Origin: Salpingoeca rosetta
Taxonomy: Eukaryota; Protista; Choanoflagellata
Length of the DNA: 45,931 bases
NCBI GenBank assembly: GCA_033442325.1
Contig: JAWQFM010000017.1
Coordinates: 1,206,185-1,252,115 of the forward strand
Direction of reading: 5' to 3'
A model generated the notes under the pieces. The model was not told the origin of the DNA. It worked only from the letters and a program-made list of their open reading frames with translations, and did not search any database. Numbering within the stretch: position 1 is the stretch's first letter; every line of letters starts with the position of its first letter. Positions 9,874 through 31,514 of this stretch are shown here, in pieces. A program made the position numbers and the translations under genes.

Positions 9874-10956
9874 CTCTCCTCGTCGTCCTCCTCTTCGCCC
9901 ATGACGTCGTCGACAGCGTCGTCCATCATCTCCTGCTTCATATCCATCACCTCAGACTGATGTACAACACACACACACACACACACACGCACGTCAGGCA
10001 GCGAGGTAATGCGGTCATGAGGCGTGCGCTGTGACAAGGTATTGCATTCCACGCAAGTCACCCCACTGTTACCCATCATCGTACACACACACACGTACCT
10101 GTTTCTCGAATTCTGCCATGATCTTCTGCAATGCGGGAATGTTCATCGTCTTGTTCATGCGCGCCATGGCCTGAGGGGATTGGGGGTTGGTTGTTGGGTG
10201 AGCGCCAGTGTTACGCACACGCTTACATCACACATCGCTGCCGCAGCACTTTCCCAAAACAAGCACGATTGACAAACACCCGAAAATGACACAGCCAACC
10301 ACCCACACCCACACCCACCCACACCCACACCCACACCCACCCACACCCACACCCACACACACACACACACGCACACCCACACCCACACCCACACACACAC
10401 ACACGTGCGCATGCGCATGTGCACCTTTGTGACGCCCGACATGGCCTTGGCCATGCTGTTTGTGGCCTTGAGCGTCTGTTGTGGTTGGCAAGATAATGTG
10501 GTGCATGCAAGGCATACGTGAGTCGGAGGAGGAGAGACAGGCAAGCAGGAAGCAACAATGAGGCAATACGCAGATTGACCGTCCCAACAAAACAAGGCGA
10601 ACGACGTACACAAGGGTGAAACACTTCCACGAAGGTGAAACAACACCGTTCACAACTCAAGCAAAGACACACATTCACACACACGCAGAAGCATGTACAA
10701 GCACACACACACGCAGAAACATATACAAGCACACACACAAGCACACCTGGATCTTGAGGGAGACGGCTTGGATCTGTGTTTTCATCATGATCATCTTCTT
10801 CTGGAAGCGGCGGGTTCTCACCACGTCCTTTGCCATGATCTTGGCCGCATCCACTTGCCCTGCGCGGGCCGCCTTCTTGATGTCCATCATGGTCTTCTTC
10901 TCTTGCCGTTCCAAGCTCTGACGTTCCCGATCCAAATCCCTGCACCACGCAAAAAA

Positions 10957-11012
<56 letters not shown>

Positions 11013-11102
11013 AAGCGAATGGGACAGTACACAAAAGATCAGCAAAGGCAATTGAGAAAGGGGGAGCACGGACAACCTTCCTGACACGGTGACATCACAA
11101 AA

Positions 11103-11134
<32 letters not shown>

Positions 11135-11402
11135 ACGCACACGCGCAAACGCGCATGCAGACACACACACACACACACACACAAACACAACAGCAGACAC
11201 ACACACACACACACACACAAACACAACAGCAGACACACACACACACACAAACACAACAGCAGACACACACACACACACACAAACACAACAGCAGACACAC
11301 ACACACACAAACACAACAGTACCTCATGGCGCGTCGCAGTAGCCGCTGGTTCTCCTTCATCATCTCCTCCGGCGTCTTCTTGCGCCCAAACAGCCACTCC
11401 AT
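9874..11402 (-). CDS. CHMP2A: ESCRT-III subunit CHMP2A/Vps2 (3'-partial; C-terminal exons lost at the gap)
   Basis: Exons 11402-11323, 10939-10747, 10475-10425, 10170-10099 and 9956-9874. They read MEWLFGRKKTPEEMMKENQRLLRRAMRDLDRER..AKIMAKDVVRTRR..QIQAVSLKIQTLK..SMAKAMSGVTKAM..PALQKIMAEFEKQSEVMDMKQEMMDDAVDD. Confidence 0.95.
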
Positions 11403-11692
11403 GGTCGGTTGTTGTTGTTATGTGTCTGTCTGTCAACGATCCCCTTCCTTTTCTTTGCTTCCGTTTGTTTTCCTTGCTCTGCTTTCCTTTGCTTGCTTGT
11501 TGCTCTGGCCTTTGTTTGTGTGAATGCAGCGCACACGTCTTGTCCGTCGTCTGCTGTGGTCGTTGCTTGTTGTCGAGTTGGTTGGTTGTGCCGCCTCCTC
11601 CTTGCTTGATGACTCATCAACTTGGGTGCTTTTTATTATTTGTTCCCGGTTGATTGATTCAATGGCCAGTTAATGGCCTAAAAAATAAAATA

Positions 11693-11700
11693 TTTCCCGC
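11693..11700 (+). promoter_or_regulatory. E2F-consensus-like site (TTTCCCGC) in an AT-rich patch of the CHMP2A / PGBD-like divergent intergenic region
   Basis: Exact match to TTTSSCGC; function is inferred. Confidence 0.3.
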
Positions 11701-12115
11701 AGATTTACACATTTTTTATTTTCTCGAGGAAGGCGCGCTCAACGTTCAAGTTTGTTGTTGTTGTGGTGGTGCGCGAGAGGAGCAACGGTTCAAGAAGCAA
11801 GGCAAGAAGGCAACAAGGCAGTTGGTGAGCGACGTGAGCTGCTGCTGTTGTGGTTGGTTCTTGTTGGCTGTTAGTTGGTGTGTGGCTGGGTTGCTGGCTG
11901 GTTGTGGTTGACTGTAGTTGGCGACCTGACACTGCTGCTGCAGCTGGACCGCTGAGATCCCCCTCACCCTATCAACGAGCAACCGCCCACGTTTAGTGAC
12001 TCACATCGTTTGCTTTGCACCTCACACGCGTGCACACGAACGCACGCACGCACGCGCACACTGCCGTGCAACGGCCGATTCAACCACAGCCAGGCAGCCA
12101 CAGCCCCACATACCC

Positions 12116-12213
<98 letters not shown>

Positions 12214-12215
12214 GC

Positions 12216-13745
12216 ATGCCGCGTGCATCGCCGTCGCTGGGCGAGGGCGCCATCGTCAGTGCCCAGGCACGCATGCTGCACCCCGCCGAGCACTTTCGAG
12301 AGGAGTTCGGCAGCGAATACAGACACCACCGCGTGCAGGATTTGGTGGTGCGAAAGCTCGCCATCCGCAAGATCCGCGCAAAGGAAACAAAGGTGGTGCT
12401 GCTGAGCCACGCAGACTTTCCCGGGCTCGAAATCTACGCCAGCCCGGGCTGCCTCAAGCTCATCACCGCCGGCCCACCAGAGAAGCAGTTCCGCAACACG
12501 GGCGAGCTCGTCTTCAGCAAGACTAAGAAGGACAAGCAAGCCATGGAGCTCTTCCGCGACCGCGCCGATCCAACGGGGCTGACTGTCGACGACCTCTCCG
12601 CCCTGCACGACCCGCTGCACCCGCGGGATGAGAACGCCACGGATCTCGGCCTCACCACAGACGTCCGCGACCACCAGGACGCTAGCGCCAGCCTGCTGGA
12701 TGATGACGACGACGGCGACCACGACCACGACCACGACCACGACGATGCTGGTGACCAGCCCAGGAGGCGCAACCGCGCGGGGAAGAGCAAGCAGCCCGGC
12801 AAGCGCGGGCGCCCGCCCAAGGGCAGCGCAAAGGGCAGCGAGTTCACCAGCATCCCGCCCATCTTCGACGAGCAGTGGGTCAGCGTGGCAAAGGAGGCTG
12901 CCATCAGACGAGCGCAGGAGGCAGACCACCACCACCATCACCACCACCACCACGTGCCCGGCATTGAGGCTGCCGATATTGGCCTGCCCATGCCCCCGGA
13001 GACAAACAAGGCAGCCATGCTCAACGGACTTCCGCTCTCGGATCCGCGCGCCCCCGTATCCATCACGCCCGGCCGCCTCTTCCGCCACTTCTTCCCGCTG
13101 GACGCCCTCAACGGCATGGTGACGCAGGCCACAAACGACGCCCACAATGAGATGATGCTGTCGGCGGGCGAGTTCACGCGCTGGCTCGGCATCTGGTTCT
13201 GCATGACTTGCTTCCCGGAGAGCCAGATCAGCAACTTCTGGCCCAACGTCGCCATGCCGCTCATCCGCACCCGCCCCAACATGGCCCAGTTTATGTCGCA
13301 GGAGCGCTTTGAGTCCATCTTGGCCAACCTGCGGTTTGCGTCCCCGGCGCACGCGCCGACAACCGGCAACGCGGCCCGTGATGACTCCATCGCCGTGCTC
13401 TCCACGCTCGTCAGCGAGTGGAACGCAAACATGCTGCAGTCGTTCTCGGCGTCATCGCTCATCCGCCTGGGTCTCTCCTCCTCCATCTCCCTGCCCGGTG
13501 TGCCAGACCACGCCACCCTCAGCACGCGCCGCAGGGCCGCCGACCCCTTCTCCACCACATACGCTGCCCTCACCTGCGCACAGTCAGGCCTCCTCTTCCG
13601 CCTCGCCCCGCTCTCCCCGCTCGTCGGGTATGCTGGCGGCATTGGTCACCCCATGCCTGCAGGCACGGGCCCTTCGTCCGCTACACAACCAACAGCAGCT
13701 GCACCTGCAGCAGCGGTGGCAGCAACAAACGGCGGCACGCCACAA

Positions 13746-13777
<32 letters not shown>

Positions 13778-14948
13778 GCAGCAGAGTGCTGGCGCAAGAC
13801 AGCCACCGCAGGGCCCACAACAGCAGGGCGCACACGCTTCAGCGGGCAGCAGCAGCAGCGCCAGTGGTGGTGGCGGCGATGGGGCAGAGTTTGCCGAGTA
13901 TGGGCGACTGCCTGGCTTCCTGCTCCGCCTGACAAAGCCACTGCACGGCACCAACCCGGTTGTTGTGCTTGACGCCAACTTTTGCTCGCCGCACGCCATG
14001 GCGGCACTGCATCGGTTTGGCGTGCTCGCGTGTGCCCCGGTGCAGACGCGGCGCCACGTGTACCCGCACGGTGTCCCCGGTGCCTCCGCTGACGAGTACA
14101 TGCGCGACAAAGGGCTTGGCTTTGTCGACGCGCTGCCTGGCCGCCTCGGCTCAAGCCCGCACCAGCAGATGTGTCTGTTTGCGCTTCGCGACAGCACGGG
14201 CGTGCCCAAGCTGCTGGCCAACTTCAACGGCGTGTGCCTGAGCGACGACACCAAGACGCGTGTGTCTGCGGACACGGGGGAGCCCACCACCTTCTCGCTG
14301 CCGCGCGTGTTCTCGGACTATCTTGCGTCGTGCCACGTGCTGGCCGACCACAACACCATCCGTAACTCGACGCTCTCCCTGGAGAAGTCATGGCCGCAGA
14401 CGTCGCATGCCATTCGCCAGCTTGCGTTTCTCCTCGCCGTGTCGGAGGTGAACGCGTGGGTCGCGTACAACCACTTCGTGCGGCGCCCCTTCAACCTGCC
14501 CGGCGTGAGCTTGCTTGAGTTCCGTGAGACGCTTGCCGTCGACCTGATCAGCAGCGACCTGCCCGACCCGCACACGAGCGCGCCGCAGCCGCAGCCAGGG
14601 ATGCAGGCACCTGGGCAGGGGCCAGGCATGCCCTATCACCACCACCACCACCCTCACCACCACCACGCCCCGCACCCAGCACAGCCGCCGCCCCAGCAGC
14701 CTGCGCAGCAGCAGCAGCAGCAACAACAACAACAGCAGCAGCAGCAGCAGCAGCAGGAGCAGCACTACCAGCAGCTGCCCAAGTACGCTGCGCCCCACAT
14801 GCAGCCCCAGGAAGAGGCGCCAACACAGCAACAGCAAGGACCGCAGCAAGGACAGCCGCAGGACGATGCCCTGATGCAACTCGCCCTTCAAGGCGGCCAT
14901 CTCGACCTTGCCTCTGAATTGCCGACCAAGCGCTCAAAACCAGAATAG
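12216..14948 (+). CDS. PiggyBac transposase-derived (PGBD-like) protein, 910 aa, intronless, with AT-hook and polyH/polyQ; catalytic triad degenerate
   Basis: Single uninterrupted ORF. PiggyBac-type blocks: LFRHFFP, EFTRWLGIWFCM, FMSQERFESILANLRF, LLRLTKPLHGTNPVVVLDANFCS, HVLADHNTIR, SLEKSW, FLLAVSEVNAWVAY and LLEFRETLAVDLI. AT-hook KRGRPPK at 12801-12821. No terminal inverted repeats were recognised. Confidence 0.85.
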
Positions 14949-14965
14949 TCAGATGCCGATTGTTG

Positions 14966-15029
<64 letters not shown>

Positions 15030-15462
15030 GATAGCACATGCGAGAACTTGCACTTCCTGCGCAGCTGTGAGGGTTTAAGTGTGAGTGATTGTGTACATGG
15101 TGTTGGCGTTAGTGCTGTTGTTTCACGTGAGAGCTTGCTTGACTGACCTGTTTTTTGCTTGATCTGTTGCTGCTTGCTTGTTGTCTCTTCACCCCTCCCC
15201 CTCCCCCTTTCCCCTCGTTGTTTGCGTCTTGCTCTGCTTGTTCATTTCATGGCCTGATGGCCGGCTGTTGCTGCGATTGTTCCGATGATGCGGACAGCCA
15301 TGCTCCTTCAATTTTTTTCTCTCACTCACTCTCACATTGCTTGTTGAATAGGGCGACAATACACAAATTGCTCACTGCACTGGCACAGCTACTGTTGTTC
15401 ACGACCGACCACAAGTGTGTGTGCACGTATGTATGTATGCATGTGTGTGTGTGCGTGCGTGT

Positions 15463-19491
<4,029 letters not shown>

Positions 19492-27619: not shown

Positions 27620-31514
<3,895 letters not shown>

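What the first reader, a model, noticed from the sequence alone, without database searches (positions are those of the whole stretch)
12216..14948. Domesticated, catalytically dead piggyBac transposase remodelled like a transcription or chromatin factor
Seen: an intact 910-aa intronless ORF among intron-dense genes, with the piggyBac-type core conserved in order. The first catalytic position (normally ..lDEsm) reads IRLGLSS, with Gly at ~13470. The third (normally VDxxN/D) reads HVLADHN, with Ala at 14343. Only the middle Asp (VVLDANFCS, 13971) remains. It has an AT-hook (KRGRPPK), polyHis tracts and a ~90-aa Gln/Ala/Gly insertion inside the catalytic core. A Gln/Pro/His-rich C-terminus replaces the Cys-rich domain. 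No TIRs or TTAA duplication were recognised, and it sits head-to-head with housekeeping CHMP2A. Established: PGBD1-5 and ciliate PiggyMac/PgmL proteins are domesticated piggyBacs, several of them inactive. From memory, the N-terminal domain (LGEGAIVS..LHP..HRVQDLVV..HADFPGLEIYA) and the core resemble a protist/diatom-type piggyBac subgroup. Inference: this is an independent domestication in a unicellular holozoan, acting as a DNA-binding regulator or as a partner of an active transposase.
Basis: partly seen in the sequence, partly recalled or inferred. Interest (0 to 1): 0.85.

Follow-up and report, generated by a model that had tools for sequence, protein, structure and literature searches.

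The report
Domesticated dead piggyBac transposase gene
This is a single-copy, expressed gene of the choanoflagellate Salpingoeca rosetta that descends from a piggyBac jumping-gene enzyme, has lost two of its three catalytic residues and its transposon-end-binding domain, and has been kept by selection, one of six such tamed genes in this genome.

Summary
Window 12216-14948(+) is an intact 910-aa ORF with a Pfam piggyBac core (E 8e-36). Its predicted fold matches the piggyBac and piggyBat transposases. In a 73-sequence family alignment the three catalytic Asp columns read Gly419, Asp586 and Ala710, and the C-terminal Cys-rich domain is gone. The gene is single copy and has no TIRs or TTAA ends. 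Stranded RNA-seq covers the whole ORF in sense with no splice joints. An ortholog from another, unnamed organism has the same losses (G/D/S). Synonymous sites between the two are saturated, yet the N-terminal domain and both core halves stay 61-79% identical, which indicates purifying selection.

- The AT-hook, the polyHis tracts and the sequence of the core insertion are not conserved in the ortholog.
- The N-terminal domain is not a host addition. It is a small beta-barrel shared with intact-triad relatives, and the nearest Atlas cluster is mostly diatom.
- A GT-AG intron splits the stop codon.

The genome holds five more piggyBac-derived genes. One of them, on contig 30, has introns and an intact DDD triad. 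The scan's first readers had already noted these paralogs on other pieces of this genome.

Verdict: a new member of a known kind (PGBD/PgmL-like). Its function is inferred, not shown.

The parts
12216..14948 (+). Coding sequence of the piggyBac-derived gene: 910 aa plus a TAG stop.
   Evidence: The ORF was listed and translated. Pfam PF13843 matches at E 7.9e-36. Stranded RNA-seq covers all 30 bins in sense, with no joints inside.
11403..12215 (.). Divergent intergenic region shared with the head-to-head Snf7/CHMP2-like gene. It is a presumed bidirectional promoter plus 5' UTR and contains the (CA)46 array at 12118-12209, which ends 6 nt before the ATG.
   Evidence: Sequence was read and microsatellites listed. 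The Snf7 domain of the neighbour's exon was found. The promoter role is inferred.
12216..12515 (+). N-terminal ~100-aa small beta-barrel domain that is ancestral to this piggyBac subfamily.
   Evidence: AF2 pLDDT is about 95. The domain is homologous to the N-termini of the C19 paralog (E 1e-11) and of many intact-triad relatives. Fold matches to Tudor, chromo-barrel and KOW domains reach only Z 5-7. Identity to the ortholog is 79% and dN is 0.14.
12564..12614 (+). Conserved acidic motif ADPTGLTVDDLSALHDP in an otherwise diverged linker.
   Evidence: The motif is nearly identical in ortholog P0001. The family consensus has a 'DDD' motif at this position.
12792..12827 (+). AT-hook-like QPGKRGRPPKGS, specific to this species.
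   Evidence: Present here. The ortholog has no GRP motif anywhere.
12927..12953 (+). His9 tract.
   Evidence: It is absent at the aligned position in the ortholog.
13038..13619 (+). First half of the transposase core (helical DNA-binding/dimerisation part plus strands beta1-beta3). Gly419 (13470-13472) stands in the first catalytic Asp column.
   Evidence: Pfam stretch 284-465. D1 column is Asp in 67/73 sequences and Gly here. AF2 places it in strand 415-422. Identity to the ortholog is 69%.
13620..13880 (+). Disordered Q/A/G-rich insertion between beta3 and the next helix of the RNase-H-like fold.
   Evidence: pLDDT is below 50. Composition is given. The ortholog has an insertion at the same place but with different sequence and length. 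It is transcribed and not spliced out.
13881..14570 (+). Second half of the core. It has the retained Asp586 (13971-13973), and Ala710 (14343-14345) stands in the third catalytic Asp column, followed by the conserved Asp711-His-Asn.
   Evidence: Column counts are. In the AF2 model D586 follows strand 582-585 and A710 sits at the start of helix 708-716. Foldseek matches 6x67 and 9c0f. Identity to the ortholog is 61%.
14571..14945 (+). Cys-free Q/P/H-rich disordered tail that replaces the Cys-rich domain. It contains the conserved short motif QQLPKYAAPHMQP (14775-14810) and a basic C-terminal end, KRSKPE.
   Evidence: One search shows 0 Cys here and in the ortholog tail, and the motif conserved as QQLPKYGAPHLQP. 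The family consensus has a CRD at this position.
14948..15351 (+). GT-AG intron (404 nt) starting in the last base of the stop codon. It holds the (TG)n array, and splicing rebuilds the TAG.
   Evidence: Loose ends of 5 reads in run X23 continue from 14948 into the sequence at 15353 onward. The boundaries were read. Support is thin: one run, 5 reads.

Best explanation
Window 12216-14948(+) is a host gene of Salpingoeca rosetta that was domesticated from a piggyBac-family transposase.

It keeps three parts of the ancestor:
- the subfamily's N-terminal small beta-barrel domain;
- the helical DNA-binding/dimerisation part of the core;
- the RNase-H-like and insertion-domain fold.

It has lost three things:
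- the first catalytic Asp (now Gly419);
- the third catalytic Asp (now Ala710);
- the whole C-terminal Cys-rich domain, which in piggyBac binds the transposon ends.

It can therefore neither recognise piggyBac ends in the canonical way nor, most likely, cut DNA.

Shown here: piggyBac ancestry, the residue losses, single copy, absence of transposon ends, sense transcription of the unspliced ORF, and purifying selection on the folded domains since the split from another species.

Inferred: it works in the nucleus as a non-catalytic DNA- or chromatin-associated scaffold. In this reading the barrel and the core provide binding surfaces. The fast-evolving Q/H/P-rich disordered regions and one conserved short motif (QQLPKYxAPHxQP) recruit partners. 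It may act together with its paralogs.
For: Ancestry:
- Pfam PF13843 matches at E 7.9e-36.
- The best Foldseek matches of the AF2 model are piggyBac 6x67 (E 6.5e-11, TM by target 0.60) and piggyBat 9c0f.
- An exhaustive profile search found 3811 relatives (E<=0.001), 200 of them at E<=1e-30.

Loss of catalysis and end binding:
- The catalytic columns are Asp in 67, 61 and 63 of 73 sequences, and read G/D/A here.
- The tail has 0 Cys where the family has a CRD.

Host gene, not a transposable element:
- The only full-length DNA match in the 55.4-Mb genome is the gene itself.
- Only 6 divergent Pfam-positive loci exist, with no repeated family.
- There are no TTAACC/GGTTAA sites and no non-microsatellite inverted repeats in the flanks.

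Expression:
- Three stranded RNA-seq runs give roughly 5-95x one-strand coverage in all 30 bins. There are no joints, indels or stops in the ORF.

Selection:
- Ortholog P0001 (1026 aa, E 1.9e-243) reads G/D/S in the triad columns and also lacks the CRD.
- GC3 is 0.80 against 0.36 and NG86 dS is undefined (saturated). dN is 0.14 in the N-domain, 0.23 in core-N and 0.32 in core-C, against about 1 in the linkers.
- The pair sits on a long stem (1.46) with short tips (0.29 each) in the tree.
Against: - No direct evidence exists for nuclear localisation, DNA binding or any partner.
- Only one ortholog was found, from an unnamed organism, so the age and breadth of conservation are poorly bounded and dN/dS cannot be quantified.
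- Asp586 and the neighbouring Asp711-His-Asn are conserved in both orthologs, so residual metal binding cannot be excluded.
- The chromatin-factor-like trimmings (AT-hook, polyHis) are not conserved.
- The barrel's resemblance to Tudor and chromo-barrel domains is only Z 5-7, within the range the tool calls a common arrangement.
Confidence: 0.75

Rival explanations
1. It is the architectural, non-catalytic subunit of a multi-paralog complex whose cutting subunit is the DDD-intact, intron-containing paralog on contig 30. This would be the arrangement known from Paramecium PiggyMac with its five PgmL groups, here carrying out some programmed DNA cleavage in the choanoflagellate.
For: - The genome has six piggyBac-derived loci. 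Five have broken or only partly resolved triads: the window gene reads G/D/A, C19 reads D/P/R and C22 reads D/G/D. C10 has D1 replaced by Thr, D2 kept and D3 not resolved. C15 is degenerate.
- The C30 gene keeps 'LVIDESM', 'VLGDSAF' and 'IDVHNHRRQ' plus a CRD, and is split by introns.
- All six share the N-terminal barrel.
- The precedent is PgmLs, which lack the catalytic site, bind Pgm and are needed for its localisation (PMC6143343, abstract).
Against: - No interaction was tested.
- No programmed genome rearrangement is known in choanoflagellates (my knowledge).
- Expression and conservation of C30 were not checked here.
- The paralogs do not form one resolved clade. The C19 group is separate, and C22 joins the window gene only at support 83.
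Confidence: 0.15
2. It is still a nuclease or recombinase that uses a rebuilt active site, with Asp586, Asp711 and other acidic residues replacing the lost Asp residues.
For: Asp586 and the Asp711-His-Asn triplet are conserved in both orthologs. The second Asp of the family's 'VDDxN' motif is common, present in 42 of 73 sequences.
Against: - Both the canonical D1 and the adjacent Glu of 'LDESM' are gone ('LGLSS').
- D3 is Ala here and Ser in the ortholog, so it is not even a conserved substitute.
- The CRD is lost.
- No coordinates were available to measure the active-site geometry.
Confidence: 0.05
3. It is a dominant-negative repressor of piggyBac transposition: a dead transposase retained to poison incoming or resident elements of the same subfamily.
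For: It keeps the core and the subfamily-specific N-terminal domain that active relatives also carry. Inactive transposase derivatives that inhibit their parents are known, for example the Tn5 inhibitor, which appears among the weak structural matches.
Against: The genome shows no active or multi-copy piggyBac element to repress. Long conservation without a target is hard to explain. The lineage-specific loss of the CRD and the gain of long disordered regions point to a new role.
Confidence: 0.04
4. It is a decaying or neutral relic of an immobilised element that happens to keep an open frame.
For: About a third of the protein is low-complexity and evolves almost freely, with dN near 1.
Against: - A 2.7-kb frame is intact in two species whose synonymous sites are saturated.
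- The folded domains are 61-79% identical.
- The ORF is transcribed in sense.
- Both species share the same specific losses.
Confidence: 0.01

Closest known systems
Paramecium PiggyMac-like proteins (PgmL1-5), partners of PiggyMac
   Same: - Both are domesticated piggyBac transposases that keep the core fold but lack a conserved catalytic site.
- Both occur as several divergent paralogs beside one paralog with an intact DDD triad (PMC6143343).
   Different: - The lineages are different and the domestication is independent, which I infer from the tree and from the diatom-like nearest cluster.
- No programmed DNA elimination is known in choanoflagellates.
- No interaction with the intact paralog has been shown.
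- The window protein has also lost the Cys-rich domain.
Vertebrate PGBD1-5 (piggyBac transposable element-derived genes)
   Same: They are single-copy and lack TIRs. They are under purifying selection, and the catalytic domain is not always conserved (PMC5381638 abstract).
   Different: - They are not orthologous. The nearest relatives here are ~700-aa protist (diatom-type) proteins with an N-terminal barrel. PGBD1- and PGBD4-like Atlas clusters match less well (TM 0.67-0.71 against 0.87).
- There is no SCAN or other host-domain fusion.
- The piggyBac survey that defined the PGBD groups does not mention choanoflagellates.
Active piggyBac / piggyBat transposases (PDB 6x67, 9c0f)
   Same: The core fold is the same (Foldseek prob 1.00, TM by target 0.54-0.60), and Pfam assigns the same family.
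   Different: The triad reads G/D/A instead of D/D/D. There is no Cys-rich domain, no TIRs or TTAA, and only a single copy. The protein has an ~87-aa disordered insertion after beta3 and an N-terminal barrel domain that the solved transposases were not seen to match.
Uncharacterised ~690-710-aa piggyBac-like proteins of protists (ESM Atlas clusters, commonest Bacillariophyta; metagenomic P0006-P0040)
   Same: They share both the N-terminal barrel (E down to 5e-16; TM 0.56) and the core (TM 0.87; E about 1e-90).
   Different: They have 'CLDESM', 'VLDSGFC' and 'AVDDxN' intact and carry a CRD, so they look like working transposases. The window protein is a derived, dead, longer version.

Membership tests
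piggyBac superfamily (Pfam DDE_Tnp_1_7) by descent | Significant match to the PF13843 profile above the gathering score | tested here: met
   Score 124.5 bits against a cut-off of 22.4, E 7.9e-36, matched in two stretches.
piggyBac superfamily (Pfam DDE_Tnp_1_7) by descent | piggyBac transposase fold | tested here: met
   The top three Foldseek matches of the AF2 model are 6x67_C, 9c0f_D and 9c0f_C (E 6.5e-11 to 8e-08, prob 1.00). Tn5 comes next, at E 7e-3 and weaker.
Active piggyBac-like element (PBLE) | Intact DDD catalytic triad | tested here: not met
   The triad reads Gly419/Asp586/Ala710 in columns that are Asp in 67, 61 and 63 of 73 family members.
Active piggyBac-like element (PBLE) | C-terminal Cys-rich domain | tested here: not met
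   The 125-aa tail has 0 Cys. The family consensus keeps CxxC..CxC..CxxC..H at this position.
Active piggyBac-like element (PBLE) | Terminal inverted repeats flanked by a TTAA duplication | tested here: not met
   There is no TTAACC or GGTTAA in 10000-17500. The only flanking inverted repeat is (CA)n against (TG)n microsatellites, which are common throughout the window.
Active piggyBac-like element (PBLE) | Multiple similar copies in the genome | tested here: not met
   There is one full-length DNA match, the gene itself. All other matches are low-complexity stretches of 96 bp or less.
Domesticated piggyBac-derived gene (PGBD-type, in the sense of PMC5381638) | Intact ORF at a single locus without transposon ends | tested here: met
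Domesticated piggyBac-derived gene (PGBD-type, in the sense of PMC5381638) | Ortholog in another species under purifying selection | tested here: met
   One ortholog was found (P0001, on contig L014). dS is saturated and dN is 0.14-0.32 in the domains. There is only one species pair, so no numerical omega and no synteny test.
Domesticated piggyBac-derived gene (PGBD-type, in the sense of PMC5381638) | Expression as a host mRNA | tested here: met
   Three raw RNA-seq runs give strand-specific coverage of the whole ORF.
Pgm/PgmL-type multi-transposase complex | Physical interaction of the dead paralog with a catalytically intact paralog, and a DNA-elimination phenotype | not testable with these tools
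   Only the gene content fits: six paralogs, with C30 keeping an intact triad. No interaction or phenotype data exist.
Tudor / chromo-barrel ('Royal') reader domains (N-terminal domain) | Fold match clearly above background, and an aromatic cage | tested here: inconclusive
   The best matches are Z 7.2 (Spt5 KOW), Z 6.7 (Tip60 chromo-barrel) and Z 6.3 (TDRD3 Tudor). Foldseek's best is the MSL3 chromo-barrel at E 0.11. All are below the tool's Z 8 caution line. There is no Pfam hit. The aromatic cage was not examined.

The most novel reading that the evidence does not exclude
Salpingoeca rosetta, a close unicellular relative of animals, runs a PiggyMac/PgmL-like machine. In this reading the window protein and four other dead piggyBac-derived paralogs act as architectural subunits around the DDD-intact, intron-containing contig-30 paralog. 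Together they make programmed DNA breaks or excisions, for example at a particular life-cycle stage. This would be a domesticated-transposase genome-editing system outside ciliates and vertebrates.
Probability: 0.07. Interest if true: 0.9.

Novelty: new member of a known kind. Interest (0 to 1): 0.5.

Why it matters
Domestication of piggyBac transposases is well documented in vertebrates (PGBD1-5) and ciliates (Pgm, PgmL, Tpb). I found no paper describing it in choanoflagellates, the sister group of animals. The only existing labels are automatic ones.

This gene shows a clean case of stepwise disarmament: loss of the first and third catalytic Asp and of the Cys-rich domain, while the fold is kept. 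It belongs to a six-gene family that includes one catalytically intact, intron-bearing member.

S. rosetta is genetically tractable (my knowledge). The family therefore offers a testable system for asking what dead transposases do in a simple holozoan, and whether any transposase-derived DNA cutting occurs there.

The shared N-terminal barrel also defines a protist piggyBac subfamily that, as far as the literature searched here shows, has not been described.

Tried and rejected
- The own-genome protein search failed with a machine error. It was replaced by Pfam-family and DNA searches.
- phmmer of the full protein against PDB returned only His-tag and polyQ noise. The full-length 4-sequence profile returned polyQ proteins. 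Only the core-only profile reached piggyBat.
- All three word-indexed homolog searches found only ortholog P0001, because low-complexity words filled the candidate lists. The taxonomy of the ~700-aa intact relatives could therefore not be read from names. Cluster look-ups gave mostly unnamed metagenome contigs.
- The exact 910-aa sequence is not in the 15-billion-protein collection, but the ESM Atlas holds it letter for letter. I therefore make no claim that the gene is unannotated.
- The organism behind the ortholog (Logan contigs of SRR14727189 and SRR14727191) could not be identified. No paper cites these runs.
- The ortholog contig carries no neighbouring gene, so synteny was not testable.
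- A numerical dN/dS could not be obtained because dS is saturated.
- Complex prediction on a homodimer of core residues 283-780 gave 'no answer' (score 0.02, below the mark, controls not run). This is no evidence either way.
- Reading the (CA)n...(TG)n pair that brackets the ORF as TIRs was rejected. The window has 64 such arrays.
Full report
**1. The observation**

The window holds an open frame on the + strand. From the ATG at 12216 it encodes 910 aa and ends with TAG at 14946-14948. IRLGLSS has Gly419 at nt 13470. VVLDANF has Asp586 at nt 13971. HVLADHN has Ala710 at nt 14343. KRGRPPK is at aa 196-202. There is a His9 tract at aa 238-246 and a second His-rich run in the tail.

The ORF region has 64-65% G+C against about 50-58% around it. 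Pfam gives a single family, PF13843 DDE_Tnp_1_7, at 124.5 bits and E 7.9e-36, matched in two stretches split by the insertion.

**2. Organism and copy number**

The window is contig 17 of a 55.4-Mb, 68-contig assembly. A paralog on contig 22 is 100% identical, over the 615 aa aligned, to Salpingoeca rosetta PTSG_12685, so the genome is S. rosetta.

A DNA search of the whole assembly finds the ORF once. All other matches are low-complexity stretches of 96 bp or less. A Pfam-family search finds only six loci in total, all mutually divergent. The genome therefore has no repeated piggyBac element family.

**3. Transposon ends**

No TTAACC or GGTTAA occurs within 10000-17500. Each flank has a single TTAA. 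No non-microsatellite inverted repeat links the flanks. The ORF is bracketed by (CA)46 at 12118-12209 and (TG)29 at 14970-15027. The window carries 64 such arrays, so I do not read these as TIRs.

**4. The catalytic triad**

An exhaustive profile search with the core of four paralogs found 3811 relatives (E<=0.001), 200 of them at E<=1e-30. I aligned 73 of them. The family consensus reads 'CLDESM', 'VVxxDSxFC' and 'RHAVDDxNxxRQ'.

| Catalytic column | Asp in family | Window | Ortholog P0001 |
|---|---|---|---|
| D1 | 67/73 | Gly419 | Gly |
| D2 | 61/73 | Asp586 | Asp |
| D3 | 63/73 | Ala710 | Ser |

A one-residue slip that would put Asp711 at D3 is not favoured. The family itself has 'VDD', and Asp711 aligns with the second Asp (Asp in 42/73 sequences). 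A core-only profile reaches the solved piggyBat transposase (9c0f, E 1e-3), and that alignment ends at its 'LSLD' residue on the D1 column.

The AF2 model has mean pLDDT 72, with the core mostly above 90. It puts Gly419 in strand 415-422, Asp586 just after strand 582-585 and Ala710 at the start of helix 708-716. These are the expected places in an RNase-H-like fold, which is my own knowledge. Foldseek's best matches for the model are piggyBac 6x67 (E 6.5e-11) and piggyBat 9c0f.

The family consensus ends in a Cys-rich domain. The window protein and its ortholog have no Cys at all in their tails.

**5. Real, expressed gene**

Three raw, stranded RNA-seq runs of the same species cover all 30 bins of 12212-14958. 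Almost all reads lie on one strand, with the first mate on the minus strand, which in the usual stranded libraries means a + strand RNA. Depth is about 5-95x from a quarter of each run. There are no joints, indels or stop-creating differences inside the ORF. The Q/A/G-rich insertion is therefore translated sequence and not an intron.

Five reads in one run continue from 14948 into the sequence at 15353 onward. This fits a 404-nt GT-AG intron (14948-15351) that begins in the last base of the stop codon and rebuilds TAG. The coding region is intronless, but the gene is not.

The neighbour on the minus strand starts at 11402, 813 bp from the ATG. One of its exons hits Pfam Snf7 (E 2.7e-10). It is CHMP2-like by its N-terminus, which is my own reading.

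**6. Selection**

The only close homolog is P0001 (1026 aa, E 1.9e-243). It sits on a 4.5-kb Logan contig of run SRR14727189. Its GC3 is 0.36 against 0.80 here, and NG86 dS is undefined because it is saturated.

| Region | Identity to ortholog | dN |
|---|---|---|
| N-terminal domain | 79% | 0.14 |
| Core, first half | 69% | 0.23 |
| Core, second half | 61% | 0.32 |
| Linker, insertion, tail | 25-34% | about 1 or more |

Neutral sequence would be unrecognisable at this distance, so the folded parts are under purifying selection. In the tree the two form a 100%-supported pair with short tips (0.29 each) on a long stem (1.46). This pattern fits fast change at or after domestication followed by constraint.

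Not conserved:
- the AT-hook, since the ortholog has no GRP motif anywhere;
- the first His tract;
- the sequence of the insertion.

Conserved in the disordered parts:
- ADPTGLTVDDLSALHDP;
- QQLPKYxAPHxQP;
- a basic C-terminus, KRSKPE against KRAKTQ.

**7. The N-terminal domain**

Residues 1 to about 100 fold with high confidence (pLDDT about 95) into a small beta-barrel. The domain is homologous to the N-terminus of the contig-19 paralog (E 1e-11). A profile of it finds the N-termini of many intact-triad relatives (E down to 5e-16). It was therefore part of the ancestral transposase and is not a host addition.

Structure searches give Spt5 KOW, Tip60 and MSL3 chromo-barrels and several Tudor domains at Z 5-7, and Foldseek gives E 0.11 or weaker. 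This is only a fold-class resemblance. There is no Pfam match.

The ESM Atlas's nearest structural clusters for both this domain (TM 0.56) and the core (TM 0.87) are ~705-aa PF13843 proteins whose few classified members are mostly diatoms.

**8. The family in this genome**

| Locus | Triad and other features |
|---|---|
| Contig 19 | D/P/R, CRD kept. Orthologs P0003 (D/S/K), P0004 (D/D/H, from the sister run SRR14727191) and Salpingoeca infusionum P0005 (G/N/A) |
| Contig 22 (PTSG_12685) | D/G/D, CRD kept |
| Contig 15 | N-terminal barrel and CRD present, degenerate core, frame interrupted |
| Contig 10 | Giant gene with an internal duplication. D1 is Thr in 'LRLTTGH', and a large insertion lies at the same place as in the window protein. 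Possibly the closest paralog |
| Contig 30 | Split by introns. Keeps 'LVIDESM', 'VLGDSAF' and 'IDVHNHRRQ' plus a CRD |

First readers of this scan had flagged five piggyBac-derived genes on other pieces of this genome. I reached the same loci independently before reading those notes.

**9. How it most likely works**

Shown: the protein descends from a transposase and is kept by selection. It lacks two catalytic Asp residues and the domain that binds transposon ends in piggyBac. The role of the CRD is from PMC9499001's abstract as listed, and from my own knowledge.

Inferred: it acts without cutting DNA, as a nuclear DNA- or chromatin-associated scaffold. The conserved barrel and core would provide binding or oligomerisation surfaces. 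The disordered Q/H/P-rich regions and the conserved short motif would provide partner contacts.

A more specific version has a precedent. In Paramecium, PgmLs lack the catalytic site, bind the active Pgm and position it (PMC6143343). Here the same role would pair the window protein with the DDD-intact contig-30 paralog. The gene content fits, but nothing else has been tested.

A homodimer prediction for the core gave no verdict.

**10. Comparison and novelty**

The gene meets the criteria used for PGBD-type domesticated genes (PMC5381638). These are no ends, a single copy, purifying selection and a catalytic domain that is not necessarily conserved. It fails every test for an active element.

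It is not an ortholog of vertebrate PGBD1-5, because its nearest kin are protist-type elements with the barrel domain. Full-text searches found no paper on piggyBac domestication in choanoflagellates, and the 2017 piggyBac survey does not mention them.

I file it as a new member of a known kind. The six-gene family with one intact member is the part most worth following.

Noticed in passing
G000:C30:~115100-118100 (+); locus L012 3174-6060: This is a multi-exon piggyBac-derived gene whose introns carry GT repeats. All three catalytic motifs are intact ('LVIDESMSGW', 'TVLGDSAFASV', 'NTIDVHNHRRQ'). It also has an N-terminal barrel and a Cys-rich domain. It is the only catalytically competent-looking member of the family in this genome.
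   Followed up: partly
G000:C10:~541000-551000; locus L013: This is a giant piggyBac-derived gene with an open frame of more than 2000 aa. The D2-containing segment is duplicated internally about 750 bp apart. D1 is replaced ('LRLTTGH'). A very long insertion sits at the same beta3 position as in the window protein, so it may be the window gene's closest paralog.
   Followed up: partly
G000:C19 (L001 1120-3471, -), G000:C22 (L009 2756-6199, -), G000:C15 (L005/L011): These are three further piggyBac-derived genes with broken triads: C19 reads D/P/R, C22 (PTSG_12685) reads D/G/D, and C15 is degenerate. All three still carry the Cys-rich domain. The C19 type has orthologs in Salpingoeca infusionum (EukProt) and in run SRR14727191.
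   Followed up: partly
window 12216-12515 and the N-termini of P0006, P0008, P0022, P0025, P0040 and others: A ~100-aa beta-barrel domain ('MPR..LG.GA.V....LHP...') heads a whole subfamily of ~700-aa piggyBac-like proteins from protists and metagenomes. It has no Pfam model and resembles Tudor, chromo-barrel and KOW folds only weakly.
   Followed up: partly
window 14946-15352: The stop codon is split by a GT-AG intron (14948-15351). The spliced and unspliced mRNAs both end the protein at the same TAG. Support is 5 reads in one run.
   Followed up: partly
whole window: The window has 64 (CA)n/(TG)n arrays of 10 or more units in 46 kb. Many lie in introns and right next to coding exons. One lies 6 nt upstream of this gene's ATG.
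   Followed up: no
window 12716-12747: A ~30-nt GAT/GAC-rich stretch (encoding DDDDGDHDHDHDHDD) attracts many chimeric-looking RNA reads and contig ends from other transcripts, with depth spikes, loose ends and a C>T difference at 12713. This is most likely a repeat shared with other genes, not editing or splicing.
   Followed up: no
window 15463-19491 and 27620-31514: Earlier first-reader notes on this same window describe an AKTIP/Ft1 UEV-PH fusion and a SHLD2-like gene. I did not examine either.
   Followed up: no
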